A stretch of 36,176 nt of DNA from Octopus bimaculoides (lineage: Eukaryota): the NCBI RefSeq assembly GCF_001194135.2, contig NC_069009.1:2202272-2238447 (forward strand), given 5' to 3'. The notes beneath the pieces are model-generated. The model saw nothing but the letters and a program-made list of their open reading frames with translations, was not told the origin of the DNA and did no database searches. Below, piece by piece: positions 1,758 to 36,104 of the stretch (position 1 is the first letter of the stretch; every line of letters begins with the position of its first letter). Made by a program: the position numbers and the translations under genes.

Positions 1758-1829
1758 AGATATCCTAAACTGGAAAGGCCATTGAAGGATCCTACTTGAA
1801 GTTTCTCCATACCATTTCCATTCAAAAAT
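1758..1829 (-). CDS. LRR exon L1 (class B): FLNGNGMEKLQVGSFNGLSSLGY(L)
   Basis: Acceptor AG at 1830-1831, donor GTAAGT at 1752-1757 (minus), 72 nt, phase 2-2. Confidence 0.92.
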
Positions 1830-2219
1830 CTATGAGATAAAAGGTTGGAAAGGAGATTTATTGTAAAATATTATGATTGAAATGTCTATAAAATAAAATA
1901 TTAGATGATTAGAAAATGTATAGAAGTGTTTTATTATAAAATGTAAAATATGGTGGCTAAAAAATAACTTTTTGATATACTCCTATGCACCACACATCCA
2001 TACAGATTTATGCAGAAAATAGTTCCCCTGATCTATCATGCTCTCATATATGCCATATCGTTGAAATTGGCACACTTTCACTCACACAGGTTTAGAAACA
2101 ATATAACATCTTTGGAAACACGGATCAAGGAACTTAAAACGGATGAAGGGAAGATAATGCAGATTTAGAAATATATCACCAATGAAATACGAAAAAAAGA
2201 AAAAACTGATTCAACTTAC

Positions 2220-2291
2220 ATATATTCTAACTTGTTTAGATTTCGGAAGGAGTTTGTTTTGATTTCCTTGATCTTATTATAACGCAAGTCT
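2220..2291 (-). CDS. LRR exon L2 (class A-like): DLRYNKIKEIKTNSFRNLNKLEY(I)
   Basis: AG at 2292-2293, GTAAGT at 2214-2219, 72 nt, phase 2-2. Confidence 0.92.
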
Positions 2292-2393
2292 CTGGAACAT
2301 AAAATTGAGACAATAAGAAATCATATAGAGTATATTTGGGATTGAATTTTTCCTAAACAATTAGATGATGGAATTAATCACGATGATGAATAA

Positions 2394-3310
2394 CACGGGT
2401 CATCAACAAAAAATTTTGAAATGGTGTTGAGACACCAAACATCTTTTGTTTTTTTAGCTAATTTGAGGGCACTGAATCTGAAAATGACCTTACTTTTTCT
2501 TGGTTAACCACCGTTTCTGCTGTACAGAAATGCCTCATTTTGGGGAAAAAAGTATTTTTTTCATTCGTTTTCTGTATATTTGATATTGAATAATAGCAAT
2601 ATTTCTCAAAGTAAAATCGTAGAAACTTCTCAATGGTAAAACTTTTCTCTTTCTTGATTGTCCATCATGTCCAATGTTGTTCAAGTCAGCCATCATTCAT
2701 TTGTCCCACCGTACTTAGTAGCGCTCTTCCATAATTTTGATATCCCGATGGAATGGTTCTCCTTGATCATCGCTCACATCACCGCAATTATCCGGAAATC
2801 TATCTAGATGGCTATGTAAAAAAATGAACCTTAATACTCATATTAGCGCCTTTGTCCTGTATTCTTTTCAACAGCTTTTCCACTAATTCCTTGTAGTGTT
2901 TGGCCCGGAGATTGCCTAAGAGGTTTTTCACCAGGTCTGCAAACGATGTGCAAGTGCGTAATTCCAAGTCATTCATTGAATTAACAAATTCACCATCCTC
3001 AATGAGTTTCCTGATATCAGGGTCATTAAACAATCTTGCTTTATGTTTTTGGGTGCTAAGTCCTGGAAACGATTTACATATAAACTCAAAACATTTACTT
3101 TCTTTGTCGAGTGATTTTATACACTGTTTCATTAATCCCAATTTGATATGCAAGGGAGGGAAGATGATTTTTTTTCTTTCAGAACTAGCGCTGCACTAAT
3201 AACATTTACATTACATTTTGCGTGATCACATTTAGGTAATTTGATCTTTCCTAATGTCTGCTCCGAATCTGAGGAATGGGCCTTCGCTCGCATTCACAAA
3301 CAATAAAATG
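2394..3310 (-). mobile_element. Decayed DNA transposon, C-terminal transposase half plus terminus (Chapaev3/CMC-like)
   Basis: Minus strand gives IIFPPLHIKLGLMKQ...LLGN...MSIKVHF(fs)LHSHLDRFPDNCGDVSDDQGEPFHRDIKIMEERY*, matching the HIKLGLMK and SDExGERFHQDI motifs. The terminus CAC at 2394 follows TAA. Frameshifts and stops are present. Superfamily assignment is from memory of the motifs. Confidence 0.7.
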
Positions 3311-3556
3311 CCTTTTGGAAAAAGACAGATTTTCACATACAAACAGGCATACACATGCATGCAGCAAATGGTTCCCCTGAACTATCAGGCTCTAATATAT
3401 GCCATATCATAGAAATGGGGACACACTCACGCAGATTTACAAACAATAAAGCCCATCTTTGGAGAGACGGGTGAAGAAGCTTAAGATGAAAGATGGGAAG
3501 ATAATGGATTTAGAAATAAATCGTGAATGACATATTAAAAAACCGATTTAACTTAC

Positions 3557-3628
3557 AGATATGTTAATTTGGACTGACTTCGGAAGGTGGCTGCTTTGAT
3601 ATCCTTGATATCATTATAACTCAAGTAT
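3557..3628 (-). CDS. LRR exon L3 (class A-like): YLSYNDIKDIKAATFRSQSKLTY(L)
   Basis: AG at 3629-3630, GTAAGT at 3551-3556; peptide also visible at the end of ORF 3553..4899. Confidence 0.92.
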
Positions 3629-33776: not shown

Positions 33777-33848
33777 AGATATTTTAAGCTGGTCAGACCA
33801 TCGAATGATCCTACTTGAATTTTCTCGATATTATTTTCATCCAAATAT
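33777..33848 (-). CDS. LRR exon L22 (class B): YLDENNIEKIQVGSFDGLTSLKY(L), same peptide as L17
   Basis: AG at 33849-33850, GTAAGT at 33771-33776; one silent difference from L17 (TCC/TCA). Confidence 0.9.
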
Positions 33849-34164
33849 CTATAACATAAAATTTTGGAAATAAGATTTATTGTAAAATATTATGACAGAA
33901 ATCTCTATAAAATAATATATTAGATGATTAGAAAATGTATAGAAGTGTCTTATGATGAAATGTAAAATATTATAGATAAACAATAATATCGTGTAGGAGA
34001 AGGAAGGTAGGTGAGTATGAAGCATGTTCGTTAATCAACGTTAATCTGGAGATAAACACAGGAAATGATATAGAGTTAATAACAGACACAAATCGATACA
34101 CTCTCATAGATTCACCTTATAAAAAGTCACAAACATGCACACACATACACACACACATATATAC

Positions 34165-34261
<97 letters not shown>

Positions 34262-34479
34262 TACATATATATAAGTCAATAAATAGTGGGCTTGTGTTAA
34301 CCGCACGTGGAGAAATAATAGGAAAATGAAAAAATATTGCTCCCCTTGTTTCTCTTTACATTGTCAATCTCCTCAGGTAGAAATATGTGATTCTTTGAGA
34401 ATGCTTGTATAGCATCTTCGCTAAATACTTAGTAATATATTCTTAATGAAATATTTTCAACAAGACTTAGCCAACTTAC

Positions 34480-34551
34480 ATCATCATTAAACTGGACAGA
34501 CCATCAAAGGTTCCTACTTGAATTTTGTCCATTTTATTTTTATTCAAATAT
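34480..34551 (-). CDS. LRR exon L23 (class D): YLNKNKMDKIQVGTFDGLSSLMM(I)
   Basis: AG at 34552-34553, GTAAGT at 34474-34479, 72 nt. Confidence 0.92.
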
Positions 34552-36032
34552 CTGTAAAATATAATATTAGTTGATATGGATACTTAGAGAGGAACATTAT
34601 TGTAAAATATATCATAACAGCGAAATCTTTACAAAATAAGATGATGAGAAGTATTTTCTGATAAAATGTAAAATATTGTTAAACAATTACTTGATGGAGG
34701 AAAAAGAAAGTAGATGAGGATGATGAGGATAATATTGAGAATAAAGGAAATGAAGCGAAGGATAGTGATGGAGGTGGTCGTTTTGGTGTGGGTGAATATA
34801 ACGAAGAGGCTGTGGATAGGGGATGGTGGTAGTGTTGTTGAAGCTAATTTTATTGTTGATGATGGTTCGTGGAAATGATATTGATGATGGTTATTATGGC
34901 GATGATGATGATGAAACGATGAGAATTTTTATAAAACATAAAGAAAAATTAAACTTCAATAACTTAATGTGAACTATATTTGAGTCGACGGACTGAAAGA
35001 TGATTAAAATTGAAAGATGTTGAAGGAAGATGAGTAGGGTCTGAAAGAGAATAAGGATCAGTAAAATATGAAGAATAAGATTGCAATAATGGAGCAGCAG
35101 TAAAACTCTAGGAAAATTAAAAGACGGGGAAGTATAAGAAAATAACGAAATGGAGGAACAGAGGCAAATAATAAATGTGAGACCAAACGATAGAAGACGA
35201 CGTAGAGAAAGAAAGAAAAAGAAAAACAAGAAGAAGAAGAAGGGCAACAAAAACAAGAAAAGAGAAAGAAGGAAAAGAAAAAGATGGAGATTAAATGACG
35301 ACGAAGAAGAGGGAGCAAAAGAAGAGGGAGAAAAAGAAGAAGAATCAGAAGAAGAAAAAGAAGAAATAAAAGTAAATGTAGAAGATGGAGAAGAAAACCA
35401 TAAAAGAGAAGAAGCAGAAGATGAGGAAAAGAAAGAAGCTAAAAACGTAGGGAAAGAAGGAGATGACGAAAAGAAGAAGCATATAACAAAGAGAATTAAA
35501 ATGTCCCCGAAAGCAACAATTACATCAAGAGGAAATGAGGAGGGAAAACATGAAGGACAGACTTAGGAAGGGAAAGAAATTGAGGGAGAAGAAGAAGGAT
35601 AAATAGGAGGAGAAGAAGACCAATGAGAAGAAGAGCAACAATGAGAAGAAGAGCAACAATGAGAAGAAAAATAAAGGGAGAAAAACAAGAACCGCTAAAG
35701 TTTATTTTAAGAAATAACGATATGGTTCATCTGGTGCAAAATATACATCTACAAGGGTCATTCAACGATGTTATTTAGCTTCGATCTACATTTAAACACC
35801 TTATGTAATATACATACATACACTCACAACCGTTCATCCATACAGATAGACATACACATGCATGCACTAAATGTTTCCCCTCAAGTATCACGCTCCCATA
35901 TATCTCACATCTCAGAAAGGCCTCCAAATTCACATTCATTCACTAAATATAAATTGCATCTATACAAAGATATTACAGGTTTACAAATATATCGCCAAAG
36001 AAATATTATAAACGTAGGTTGATTCAACTTAC

Positions 36033-36104
36033 AGATTTGTTAAACTGGAAAGATTCCGGTAGGTTTCCGCCTTGATTTCTTTGATTTCATTACCGCGCAA
36101 ATCC
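36033..36104 (-). CDS. LRR exon L24 (class A): DLRGNEIKEIKAETYRNLSSLTN(L)
   Basis: AG at 36105-36106, GTAAGT at 36027-36032, 72 nt. Confidence 0.92.

What the first reader, a model, noticed from the sequence alone, without database searches (positions are those of the whole stretch)
1758..36104. Variation concentrated on the concave xxLxLxx face, with almost no silent change between paralogs
Seen by hand codon comparison: L11 vs L14 has 7 changed codons, all amino-acid changing, with the 13 central codons identical. L8 vs L23 has 5 nt differences and 4 aa changes, none silent, against roughly 6 differences in about 250 nt of adjacent intron. L16 vs L21 has 7 changed codons, 1 silent. L6 vs L7 has 9 changed, 1 silent. 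L10 vs L24 has 6 changed, 0 silent. The class E core INELEVGSFQ is nucleotide-identical in L11, L14 and L19. Across all 24 exons, positions 1, 3, 4, 22 and 23 show 11, 11, 8, 10 and 11 different residues, while L2 and N5 are invariant. Known: these are the solvent-exposed beta-strand positions that are hypervariable in VLRs and plant NLR/RLK LRRs. Inference: diversifying selection on a ligand-binding surface. Counter-example: L17 and L22 differ by one silent change only.
Basis: partly seen in the sequence, partly recalled or inferred. Interest (0 to 1): 0.86.

Follow-up and report, generated by a model that had tools for sequence, protein, structure and literature searches.

The report
Fast-evolving binding face in octopus-like LRR gene
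A stretch of an animal gene, most likely from an octopus, holds at least 24 small exons that each encode one leucine-rich repeat; the residues on the inner, ligand-facing side of the repeats have changed faster than the neighbouring introns. This is the usual mark of selection for new binding surfaces, and it is known from other repeat receptors.

Summary
The minus strand carries 24 exons of exactly 72 nt. Each is bounded by AG and GTAAGT, all are in intron phase 2, and each encodes one 24-residue LRR. All assembly gaps lie in introns.

In ten non-overlapping sister-exon pairs, nonsynonymous divergence at positions 1, 3, 4, 22 and 23 is 0.465. Synonymous divergence is 0.117 and flanking-intron divergence is 0.12-0.25 (p about 1e-10). 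Framework positions give 0.048 and other positions 0.139.

My own codon-model fits give omega of about 6 at the five concave sites. M2a, given no prior site list, picks sites 1, 3, 4, 6, 19, 22 and 23. The excess survives a comparison of each exon half with its own adjacent intron.

Silent changes are not deficient. There are simply few silent sites.

Gene conversion or unequal crossing-over is evident. Ancient differences preserved against homogenisation therefore remain a live rival.

The closest relatives are Octopus LRR proteins with the same exon design. The closest known analogue is the brown-algal LRR-ROCO exon array.

Verdict: a new member of a known kind, of moderate interest.

The parts
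36033..36104 (-).
   Evidence: 72 nt, AG/GTAAGT, phase 2.
34480..34551 (-). LRR exon e2 (L23), class B
33777..33848 (-). LRR exon e3 (L22), class C. Differs from e8 by one silent change.
32048..32119 (-). LRR exon e4 (L21), class D
30951..31022 (-). LRR exon e5 (L20), class B
29181..29252 (-). LRR exon e6 (L19), class E (INELEVGSFQ core)
28896..28967 (-). LRR exon e7 (L18), class A
26845..26916 (-). LRR exon e8 (L17), class C
25813..25884 (-). LRR exon e9 (L16), class D
24041..24112 (-). LRR exon e10 (L15), class B
23410..23481 (-). LRR exon e11 (L14), class E
22300..22371 (-). LRR exon e12 (L13), class A'
19714..19785 (-). LRR exon e13 (L12), class A'
18447..18518 (-). Decayed E-class pseudo-exon. 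The acceptor is kept, the donor GTAAGT has become CTAATT, and framework residues are lost (TLYNNAIKKTEVGIVQKFSGLTE).
   Evidence: nhmmer hit; sequence. In one search, 18 of 45 core nucleotides differ from e14. This serves as an internal example of unconstrained decay.
17694..17765 (-). LRR exon e14 (L11), class E
16563..16634 (-). LRR exon e15 (L10), class A
14532..14603 (-). LRR exon e16 (L9), class C
12088..12159 (-). LRR exon e17 (L8), class B
10059..10130 (-). LRR exon e18 (L7), class D
8683..8754 (-). LRR exon e19 (L6), class D
8280..8351 (-). LRR exon e20 (L5), singleton
5250..5321 (-). LRR exon e21 (L4), class F
3557..3628 (-). LRR exon e22 (L3), class F
2220..2291 (-). LRR exon e23 (L2), class F
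1758..1829 (-). LRR exon e24 (L1), class C-like
35700..36032 (-). Intron downstream of e1. It is nearly identical (2 mismatches in about 330 nt) to the intron downstream of e15 (16230-16562), although the exons differ at 10 of 72 nt and the upstream flank at about 14%. This marks a recent conversion or crossover tract that ends at or inside the exon.
33665..34022 (-). e3 plus flanks, 97.8% identical to e8 plus flanks (26733-27090). The rest of the same duplicated block is 83-87% identical. This is a recent conversion that also overwrote the concave codons.
34552..34950 (-). Intron upstream of e2. It is 2-3% diverged from the intron upstream of e17 (12160-12560), while the downstream flank is at least 16% diverged. 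The unit is a mosaic.

Best explanation
The window is an internal piece of one large animal gene, most likely from an octopod. Its extracellular domain is a long solenoid of 'typical' 24-residue leucine-rich repeats, with one repeat per 72-nt exon.

Gene design (shown). Every intron sits after the second base of the Leu-24 codon. That codon is CT|N, which gives Leu whatever base follows, or AT|N, which gives Ile or Met. Any exon can therefore follow any other without breaking the frame or the hydrophobic core. Each beta-strand of the concave sheet is built from two exons: residues 22 and 23 from one, and residues 1, 3 and 4 from the next.

Growth of the array (shown). It grew by repeated duplication of exon-plus-intron units and of multi-exon blocks. 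It was then reshuffled by unequal crossing-over or gene conversion, with breakpoints in or beside the exons.

Selection (shown for the rate, inferred for the cause). After duplication the scaffold residues (L2, N5, I7, I10, F15, L18, L21, L24) stayed fixed. The solvent-exposed residues of the concave strand (1, 3, 4, 22, 23, and to a lesser degree 6 and 19) were replaced several times faster than neutral sequence. I read this as positive selection for new side chains on a binding surface.

Function and family (inferred). The concave face is the ligand-contact surface. By analogy with its octopus relatives, the gene probably belongs to an LRR-bearing surface-receptor family linked to adhesion GPCRs.
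For: Architecture: (24 exons of 72 nt, phase 2, open frame). Pfam LRR_8 matches at E = 5.6e-212.

Duplicated exon-plus-intron units share 73-98% identity over 0.2-1.1 kb.

Ten non-overlapping sister pairs:
- concave pN 0.465 (57.3 of 123.2 sites)
- pS 0.117 (16.5 of 141.5 sites)
- introns 0.124 upstream and 0.246 downstream
- Fisher p = 2e-10 against synonymous sites and 3e-11 against introns.

Per-position pN is 0.42-0.53 at positions 1, 3, 4, 22 and 23, at most 0.30 elsewhere, and 0 at L2 and N5.

Each exon half against its own adjacent flank is still 2.3-fold higher, with p = 6e-6 and 1e-4.

A codon-level test that ignores how many events occurred finds 37 of 50 concave codons changed. Neutral expectation is 19.9 (p = 8e-8), or 27.3 with the most divergent flank (p = 1e-3).

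Codon maximum likelihood (my own implementation): omega_concave 6.1, framework 0.33, other 1.37. LRTs give p of about 1e-14. M2a picks 1, 3, 4, 6, 19, 22 and 23 without being told. The null simulation is well behaved.

The concave 12-nt segments are unique in 21 of 24 exons, so they were not copied from local donors.

The dead pseudo-exon decays evenly across its length.

In an AlphaFold model of the octopus homologue P0017 (pLDDT 72-94 in the LRR region), the strand covers motif positions 23, 24, 1, 2 and 3.

The same exon design is found in O. bimaculoides gene P0005.
Against: - Gene conversion and recombination are clearly present. Intron and synonymous divergence may therefore understate the age of the concave differences.
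- The pair e3/e8 shows no concave change.
- The E-class pair e11/e14 is compatible with neutrality, because its introns are near saturation.
- Whole-exon omega is 1.46 and omega at non-concave exposed sites is about 1-1.4. Either constraint is generally weak, or dS is somewhat depressed.
- The tree was built from 72-nt exons, and deep branches are saturated (tree length about 9 neutral substitutions per codon).
- The codon models are my own code, not codeml or HyPhy.
- Only one genome is available, with no orthologues, no polymorphism data and no transcript evidence that all 24 exons are used.
- In the paralogous O. bimaculoides locus, variability is less focused on the concave positions.
Confidence: 0.65

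Rival explanations
1. Concerted evolution with retention. The repeat units are old. Gene conversion and unequal crossing-over keep homogenising the introns and exon cores, and selection removes conversion products that overwrite the repeat-specific concave residues. The apparent omega above 1 then comes from an underestimated neutral distance, not from recurrent adaptive replacement.
For: - Flanks are mosaic: e1/e15 show 2 mismatches in about 330 nt downstream but 14% upstream; e2/e17 show 2-3% upstream but at least 16% downstream; e3/e8 are 97.8% identical inside a block that is otherwise 83-87% identical.
- The E-class cores are nucleotide-identical even though their introns are 25-45% diverged.
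- Concave residues of sister exons are almost as different (74% changed) as those of random exon pairs. I estimate about 85% for random pairs, by hand, from the residue frequencies.
Against: - Synonymous divergence within the concave codons is 0.174, not saturated.
- Conversion tracts would have to stop within a few nucleotides of the exon ends on both sides in many independent pairs.
- The e3/e8 conversion did overwrite the concave codons and has persisted.
- Even under this rival, selection still favours diversity at the concave face.
Confidence: 0.22
2. Relaxed constraint or a decaying, unused exon array. The end codons of each exon are simply free to drift.
For: Whole-exon omega is about 1.5 and omega at non-concave exposed sites is about 1. 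No gene model or transcript-derived protein for this locus appears in the protein collection.
Against: - Drift cannot exceed the neutral rate, yet concave pN is 2 to 4 times the intron and synonymous divergence.
- All 24 exons keep an open frame, an AG acceptor and a GTAAG donor. L2 and N5 are invariant and framework pN is 0.048.
- The one truly dead copy looks quite different from the 24 live exons.
Confidence: 0.04
3. A mutational artefact without selection. Short templated conversions from other LRR exons, or multi-nucleotide mutations, are concentrated at exon ends. A related possibility is assembly or haplotype mixing in a gapped draft.
For: Many concave codons differ at 2-3 nucleotides, for example TAT/CGG and TCA/AGG. 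The assembly has six gaps and some near-identical tracts.
Against: - The concave 5' segments are unique in 21 of 24 exons, and only one of them (e2) has a match among the 20 exons of the related O. bimaculoides locus.
- The codon-level test counts each changed codon once and is still significant.
- Changes are overwhelmingly amino-acid-changing, which a purely mutational process would not produce.
- Misassembly cannot create position-specific replacement patterns inside intact exons.
Confidence: 0.06

Closest known systems
Brown-algal LRR-ROCO genes (Ectocarpus, Saccharina; Zambounis et al. 2012 as cited in PMC11378527; Teng et al. 2024, PMC11378527)
   Same: One LRR per 72-bp exon, all in phase 2. 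Intense duplication and shuffling of exons. PAML site models place the positively selected sites on the concave side (PMC11378527, read).
   Different: That family is a different kingdom and a different protein: an intracellular LRR-ROC-COR GTPase. No ROC-COR domain is seen here or in the octopus relatives. Alternative splicing of the LRR exons is documented there and is untested here. The resemblance is convergent gene design, not membership.
Octopus LRR proteins P0005 (O. bimaculoides, named 'toll-like receptor 5'), P0017 (O. sinensis, 'LRRC15-like') and P0004, and the octopus-specific adhesion-GPCR expansion (group 3 of Ritschard et al. 2019, PMC6408891)
   Same: These are the relatives with the highest identity (43-50% over the LRRs). 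P0005 has the same 72-nt phase-2 single-LRR exons. Its introns align with the window's introns at 67-77%. An O. sinensis gene that overlaps the P0017 locus on the opposite strand carries LRR_8 + GPS + 7tm_2. The paper reports LRRs in 5 of 22 group-3 adhesion GPCRs, co-localised genes and signatures of positive selection.
   Different: The window holds at least 24 consecutive LRR exons, against about 11-14 in those proteins. It contains no cap, GPS or 7TM exon, so attachment to an adhesion GPCR is unproven. Concave-face hypervariability is stronger here than in the P0005 locus. The published selection tests were not on LRR concave sites, as far as the text I read shows.
Glycoprotein-hormone receptor and LGR genes
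   Same: The LRR ectodomain is encoded by a run of similar-sized exons with all introns in phase 2 (as stated in PMC11378527, citing Koo et al. 1991). LGR4 and LGR5 are among the best matches in the PDB.
   Different: Those arrays are short, ancient and conserved. They show no recent intragenic exon duplication and no reported concave-face positive selection. No 7TM is seen here.
Plant NLR/RLP resistance genes and lamprey VLRs (hypervariable xxLxLxx positions). This comparison rests on my own knowledge.
   Same: Diversity is concentrated on the solvent-exposed residues of the LRR beta-strand, with Ka above Ks there.
   Different: Plant LRR domains are mostly not one repeat per exon. VLR diversity is made somatically by copying unspliced cassettes into an incomplete gene. 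Here every unit is a regular spliceable exon in one orientation in the germline.

Membership tests
Typical (24-residue) extracellular LRR domain | Repeat consensus LxxLxLxxNxL with a 24-residue period; matches to the Pfam LRR models | tested here: met
   L2 and N5 are invariant. I7, I10, F15, L18, L21 and L24 are conserved. LRR_8 matches at E = 5.6e-212 in 18 stretches. Best PDB matches are IGFALS, LGR4/5, LRIG1 and LRRC15.
Typical (24-residue) extracellular LRR domain | Cysteine-rich N- and C-terminal caps (LRRNT/LRRCT) | not testable with these tools
   No cap-like exon is in the window (tblastn with the octopus caps). The array runs off both ends of the window.
Single-LRR 72-nt phase-2 exon arrays (design class shared by brown-algal ROCO and LGR genes) | One repeat per 72-nt exon, with all introns in the same phase (2) | tested here: met
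   24 of 24 exons.
Single-LRR 72-nt phase-2 exon arrays | Recent duplication or shuffling of exon-plus-intron units | tested here: met
   Self-comparison gives units 73-98% identical, with mosaic flanks.
Single-LRR 72-nt phase-2 exon arrays | Positive selection at concave sites under site models | tested here: met
   The caveat is paralogues only, own implementation.
Brown-algal ROCO family proper | ROC-COR GTPase domain downstream of the LRRs | not testable with these tools
   The window holds only LRR exons. The octopus relatives list no ROC or COR Pfam hits, so membership is very unlikely.
Octopus adhesion-GPCR expansion with LRR N-termini | GPS/GAIN motif and 7tm_2 domain in the same gene | not testable with these tools
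   Absent from the window. They are seen only in an O. sinensis gene that overlaps the locus of homologue P0017.
Octopus adhesion-GPCR expansion with LRR N-termini | Closest sequence relatives are octopus family members | tested here: met
   The highest-identity hits are Octopus proteins. Intron-level homology to the O. bimaculoides locus L001.
Toll-like receptor | TIR domain and a single-pass transmembrane segment after the LRR ectodomain | tested here: inconclusive
   There is no TIR in the window. The 'toll-like receptor 5' octopus relative P0005 has no TIR in its Pfam list, and its C-terminal half has no Pfam hit. The name is not supported, but the end of this gene is unseen.
Lamprey-type VLR system | An incomplete germline gene flanked by non-spliceable LRR cassettes in both orientations, assembled somatically | tested here: not met
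   All 24 units are on one strand, each with canonical AG and GTAAGT sites and regular intron spacing. This is an ordinary multi-exon gene.

The most novel reading that the evidence does not exclude
The array may be more than a fast-evolving ectodomain. Every exon is a frame-neutral, core-neutral module: 72 nt, phase 2, with a CT|N split Leu codon. Octopus cells might therefore include variable subsets of these LRR exons by alternative splicing. That would give a combinatorial repertoire of binding surfaces on a surface receptor, possibly one linked to an adhesion GPCR. It would be a cephalopod counterpart of Dscam, of the brown-algal ROCO isoforms or, functionally, of VLRs, used for chemotactile, neuronal or immune recognition.
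Probability: 0.1. Interest if true: 0.85.

Novelty: new member of a known kind. Interest (0 to 1): 0.5.

Why it matters
Cephalopod genomics has centred on protocadherin, zinc-finger and GPCR expansions. A germline LRR array that keeps duplicating repeat modules and rapidly changes only its ligand-facing residues would mark a recognition receptor under an arms race or a specificity-diversifying regime. Candidate roles are immune, chemotactile or cell-cell recognition.

The case also shows that the design of 72-nt phase-2 exons, exon duplication and concave-site selection, described in brown algae, has an animal counterpart.

In practice it flags a locus that looks unannotated and gapped, where long-read assembly and Iso-Seq would be informative.

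Tried and rejected
I modelled the octopus homologue P0017 instead.
- A second protein search with the more distinctive last eight exons found nothing above 33% identity. No gene model for this locus and no orthologue is therefore available, and the orthologue test could not be run.
- Pfam on the C-terminal half of P0005 gave no hit. By eye I read Ly6/uPAR-like, SEA-like and HRM-like segments there, but this remains unverified.
- tblastn with octopus N-cap, C-cap and C-terminal segments found nothing in the window.
- The locus of P0017 was too long to fetch.
- No tRNA genes were found. The ORF list shows only low-complexity or gap-spanning ORFs.
- I first used the flanking intron on one side as the neutral reference. 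I rejected this because the two flanks can differ 20-fold within one pair (e1/e15), and replaced it with comparisons of each exon half against its own adjacent flank.
- A deficit of silent changes was considered as a signal of its own and rejected: pS of 0.117 is about the upstream-intron value of 0.124.

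
Full report
WHAT IS THERE

The window is eukaryotic. It has about 34% G+C, many microsatellites and six runs of N. On the minus strand lie 24 exons of exactly 72 nt. Each is preceded by a pyrimidine-rich tract plus AG and followed by GTAAGT (GTAAGC in two). 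Each exon consists of 1 nt, then 23 codons, then 2 nt. Every intron is therefore in phase 2, and the joined 1728 nt are open throughout.

The last two bases of an exon are CT (19 exons) or AT (5 exons). The split codon therefore reads Leu whatever follows, or Ile/Met. Any exon can follow any other without changing the frame or the hydrophobic core.

The product is pure 'typical' LRR. Pfam LRR_8 matches at E = 5.6e-212, and the best solved relatives are IGFALS, LGR4/5, LRIG1, LRRC15 and TLR3. A profile search finds no further live exon. It does find one decayed copy at 18518-18447: the acceptor is kept, the donor is lost and the framework residues are mutated. No cap or other domain exon is in the window. 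The gene runs off both ends.

THE GAPS

All gaps lie in introns, at least 112 nt from an exon. They cannot break the frame, because a hidden exon would be 72 nt and in phase 2 like the rest. They do make '24 exons' a lower bound, and they leave adjacency of e3-e4, e8-e9, e16-e17 and e21-e22 unproven. Three gaps sit 112-340 nt downstream of the three C-class exons, next to microsatellites. They look like one homologous simple-repeat stretch that the assembler could not cross.

THE OBSERVATION

Every count reproduces:
- L11/L14: 7 changed codons, none silent, 13 central codons identical.
- L8/L23: 5 nt and 4 aa differences, against 5 mismatches in 249 nt of upstream intron.
- L16/L21: 7 changed, 1 silent.
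- L6/L7: 9 changed, 1 silent.
- L10/L24: 6 changed, 0 silent.
- L17/L22: one silent change.
- Residue counts at positions 1, 3, 4, 22 and 23 are 11, 11, 8, 10 and 11.
- L2 and N5 are invariant.
- The 30-nt E-class core is identical in three exons.

HOW THE ARRAY AROSE

Self-comparison shows that exons are duplicated together with 0.2-1.1 kb of intron, at 73-98% identity. The exons fall into classes:
- A: e1, e7, e15, with e12 and e13 more distant
- B: e2, e5, e10, e17
- C: e3, e8, e16, e24
- D: e4, e9, e18, e19
- E: e6, e11, e14
- F: e21, e22, e23
- e20 stands alone.

The order A-B-C-D-B-E / A-C-D-B-E points to block duplication.

The flanks are mosaic:
- e1 and e15 differ at 10 of 72 exon positions and about 14% upstream, but at only 2 of about 330 nt downstream.
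- e2 and e17 are 2-3% apart for 400 nt upstream and at least 16% apart downstream.
- e3 and e8 are 97.8% identical within a block that is otherwise 83-87% identical.

Unequal crossing-over or gene conversion, with breakpoints in or next to exons, has therefore happened repeatedly. Any selection test has to allow for it.

IS THE CONCAVE-FACE VARIATION FASTER THAN NEUTRAL?

I took ten sister pairs whose paths on the exon tree do not overlap: e1-15, e12-13, e2-17, e5-10, e3-8, e16-24, e4-9, e18-19, e11-14 and e22-23. Nei-Gojobori counts:

| Site class | Differences / sites | Proportion |
|---|---|---|
| Concave codons 1, 3, 4, 22, 23 (nonsynonymous) | 57.3 / 123.2 | 0.465 |
| Framework codons (nonsynonymous) | 8 / 165.7 | 0.048 |
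| Other codons (nonsynonymous) | 36.2 / 259.7 | 0.139 |
| All codons (synonymous) | 16.5 / 141.5 | 0.117 |
| Intron 20-120 nt upstream | 110 / 884 | 0.124 |
| Intron 8-108 nt downstream | 236 / 961 | 0.246 |

The downstream intron value is inflated by stretches that are no longer homologous. Concave pN exceeds pS (Fisher p = 2e-10), the introns (p = 3e-11) and the other codons (p = 5e-17).

To allow for breakpoints inside exons, I compared each half with its own neighbouring intron. Codons 1, 3 and 4 give 0.451 against 0.196 upstream (p = 6e-6). Codons 22 and 23 give 0.489 against 0.216 downstream (p = 1e-4).

To avoid counting multi-nucleotide events several times, I counted changed codons only. 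37 of 50 concave codons differ in amino acid. Neutral expectation from pooled flank distances is 19.9 (p = 8e-8). Using the more divergent flank of each pair it is 27.3 (p = 1e-3).

The variant concave segments are unique in 21 of 24 exons. They are therefore not patches copied from other exons in this window.

The dead pseudo-exon differs from e14 at 18 of 45 core positions, whereas the live exon e11 differs from e14 at none in the 13 central codons (7-19). This shows what decay without constraint looks like here.

CODON MODELS

I wrote a GY94 likelihood implementation because no PAML or HyPhy is on hand. It uses an NJ tree of the 24 exons with branch lengths optimised.
- M0 gives omega = 1.46.
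- A two-partition model gives omega = 6.1 at concave sites and 0.96 at the rest. It beats omega_concave = 1 by 2dlnL = 57.8 (p = 3e-14).
- With F1x4 frequencies and three partitions: concave 6.1, framework 0.33, other 1.37.
- M2a beats M1a by 2dlnL = 56.4. With no prior site list, it gives posterior above 0.95 for omega above 1 to sites 1, 3, 4, 6, 19, 22 and 23, and 0.89 to site 16.
- Forty data sets simulated under the null gave a maximum LRT of 10 and a maximum omega_concave of 1.7. The observed values under the same restricted procedure are 55 and 5.2.

Caveats: the tree comes from only 72 nt, the deep branches are saturated, and recombination violates the single-tree assumption. I therefore give more weight to the tree-free pair tests.

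WHAT IS NOT A SIGNAL

'Almost no silent change' is not remarkable. Each exon has about 14 synonymous sites. The observed pS of 0.117 matches the upstream-intron divergence of 0.124. The pattern comes from an excess of replacements, not a lack of silent changes.

What is unusual there is the core: it is nucleotide-identical in three exons despite 25-45% intron divergence. This suggests core-limited homogenisation or constraint on silent sites.

DO THESE POSITIONS LIE ON THE CONCAVE FACE?

From the LRR consensus (textbook knowledge), L21-x-x-L24-x1-L2-x-x-N5 is the beta-strand segment. An AlphaFold model of the octopus homologue P0017 was built from a single sequence, with pLDDT 72-94 across the LRRs. 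It places the 24-periodic strand on motif positions 23, 24, 1, 2 and 3. Solvent exposure itself was not computed. One consequence of the exon design is that each strand is encoded by two exons, so a new exon junction creates a new strand.

WHOSE GENE IS IT?

The hits with the highest identity are Octopus proteins:
- P0005, O. bimaculoides: 43% over 58% of the query.
- P0017, O. sinensis: 50% over 42%.
- P0004.

The P0005 gene (locus L001, chromosome CM046629.1) uses the same 72-nt phase-2 single-LRR exons, and all of them are included in its gene model. Its introns align with the window's introns at 67-77%. A 160-nt interspersed repeat is shared at 90%. The source is therefore an octopod, possibly O. 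bimaculoides itself.

No protein from this locus, and no orthologue, is in the 5.8-billion-protein collection. An O. sinensis gene overlapping the P0017 locus has LRR_8 + GPS + 7tm_2. Ritschard et al. 2019 (PMC6408891) describe an octopus-specific, co-localised adhesion-GPCR expansion. Five of its 22 members carry LRRs, expression is in the axial nerve cord, suckers and skin, and there are signatures of positive selection. Whether this window belongs to such a receptor cannot be told from the window. The name 'toll-like receptor' given to P0005 is not supported by any TIR hit.

COMPARISON WITH WHAT IS KNOWN

The phenomenon is well known in kind. Hypervariable xxLxLxx residues with Ka above Ks occur in plant resistance genes and VLRs (my own knowledge).

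The closest match in gene design is the brown-algal LRR-ROCO family. [quoted passage not shown] The same paper notes that gonadotropin-receptor LRR exons are also all in phase 2.

I found no paper in the held library that describes such an array in a cephalopod. I therefore rate this as a new member of a known kind.

VERDICT

The main open rival is that old concave differences are being preserved against homogenising conversion, rather than continually renewed. Both readings imply selection for diversity on the concave face. Orthologue and population data would separate them. Interest is moderate.

Noticed in passing
window 18447-18518 (-): A decayed E-class LRR pseudo-exon lies between e13 and e14. 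The acceptor CCAG is intact, the donor GTAAGT has become CTAATT, and framework residues L10, F15 and L18 are lost. There is still no stop codon. It is useful as an internal neutral control.
   Followed up: yes
window 33184-33664, 26466-26565, 13614-14191 (also 872-971 and 315-329): Each C-class exon (e3, e8, e16, and the C-like e24) is followed within 112-340 nt (about 790 nt for e24) by an assembly gap that abuts a microsatellite: a 34-mer/ATAT array, (AC)n or (ATAG)n. The gaps look like one homologous simple-repeat part of that intron, not random breaks.
   Followed up: partly
introns flanking all exon pairs (e.g. e10/e17, e8/e16, e16/e24): Between paralogous units, the 100 nt of intron upstream of the exons are about twice as well conserved as the 100 nt downstream (0.124 against 0.246). 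Homology often extends more than 300 nt upstream but less than 100 nt downstream. This could reflect constraint on the branch-point and polypyrimidine region, or the position of the duplication-unit boundaries.
   Followed up: partly
window 17715-17744, 23431-23460, 29202-29231 (-): The 30-nt core encoding INELEVGSFQ is nucleotide-identical in three E-class exons whose flanking introns are 25-45% diverged. No silent change is seen where about 2-5 would be expected (my rough estimate). This suggests core-limited gene conversion or selection on silent sites, for example splicing enhancers.
   Followed up: partly
window 1356-1515 and 5050-5206 (inverted); L001 49865-50024: A roughly 160-nt interspersed repeat is present twice in the window, in opposite orientations (79% identity). 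A 90% identical copy lies in an O. bimaculoides intron. This is consistent with a SINE-like family shared with, or belonging to, that genome.
   Followed up: partly
window 2812-3153 (-): A 113-aa ORF of normal composition lies inside the e22-e23 intron. From memory it resembles transposon-derived proteins, but it has no significant Pfam hit.
   Followed up: partly
L001 (O. bimaculoides CM046629.1, 10400675-10483064): At least three LRR genes of this family lie head to tail in 82 kb. Across their 20 LRR exons, variability is spread more evenly than in the window: positions 4, 9, 12, 16 and 23 are the highest, while positions 1 and 22 are only moderate.
   Followed up: partly
P0005 residues about 320-784 (octopus homologue): Downstream of the LRRs there is a CxC-type C-cap. 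By eye this is followed by a Ly6/uPAR-like cysteine module (ending CCTGNLC), two SEA-like segments and an HRM-like segment. None is recognised by Pfam.
   Followed up: partly
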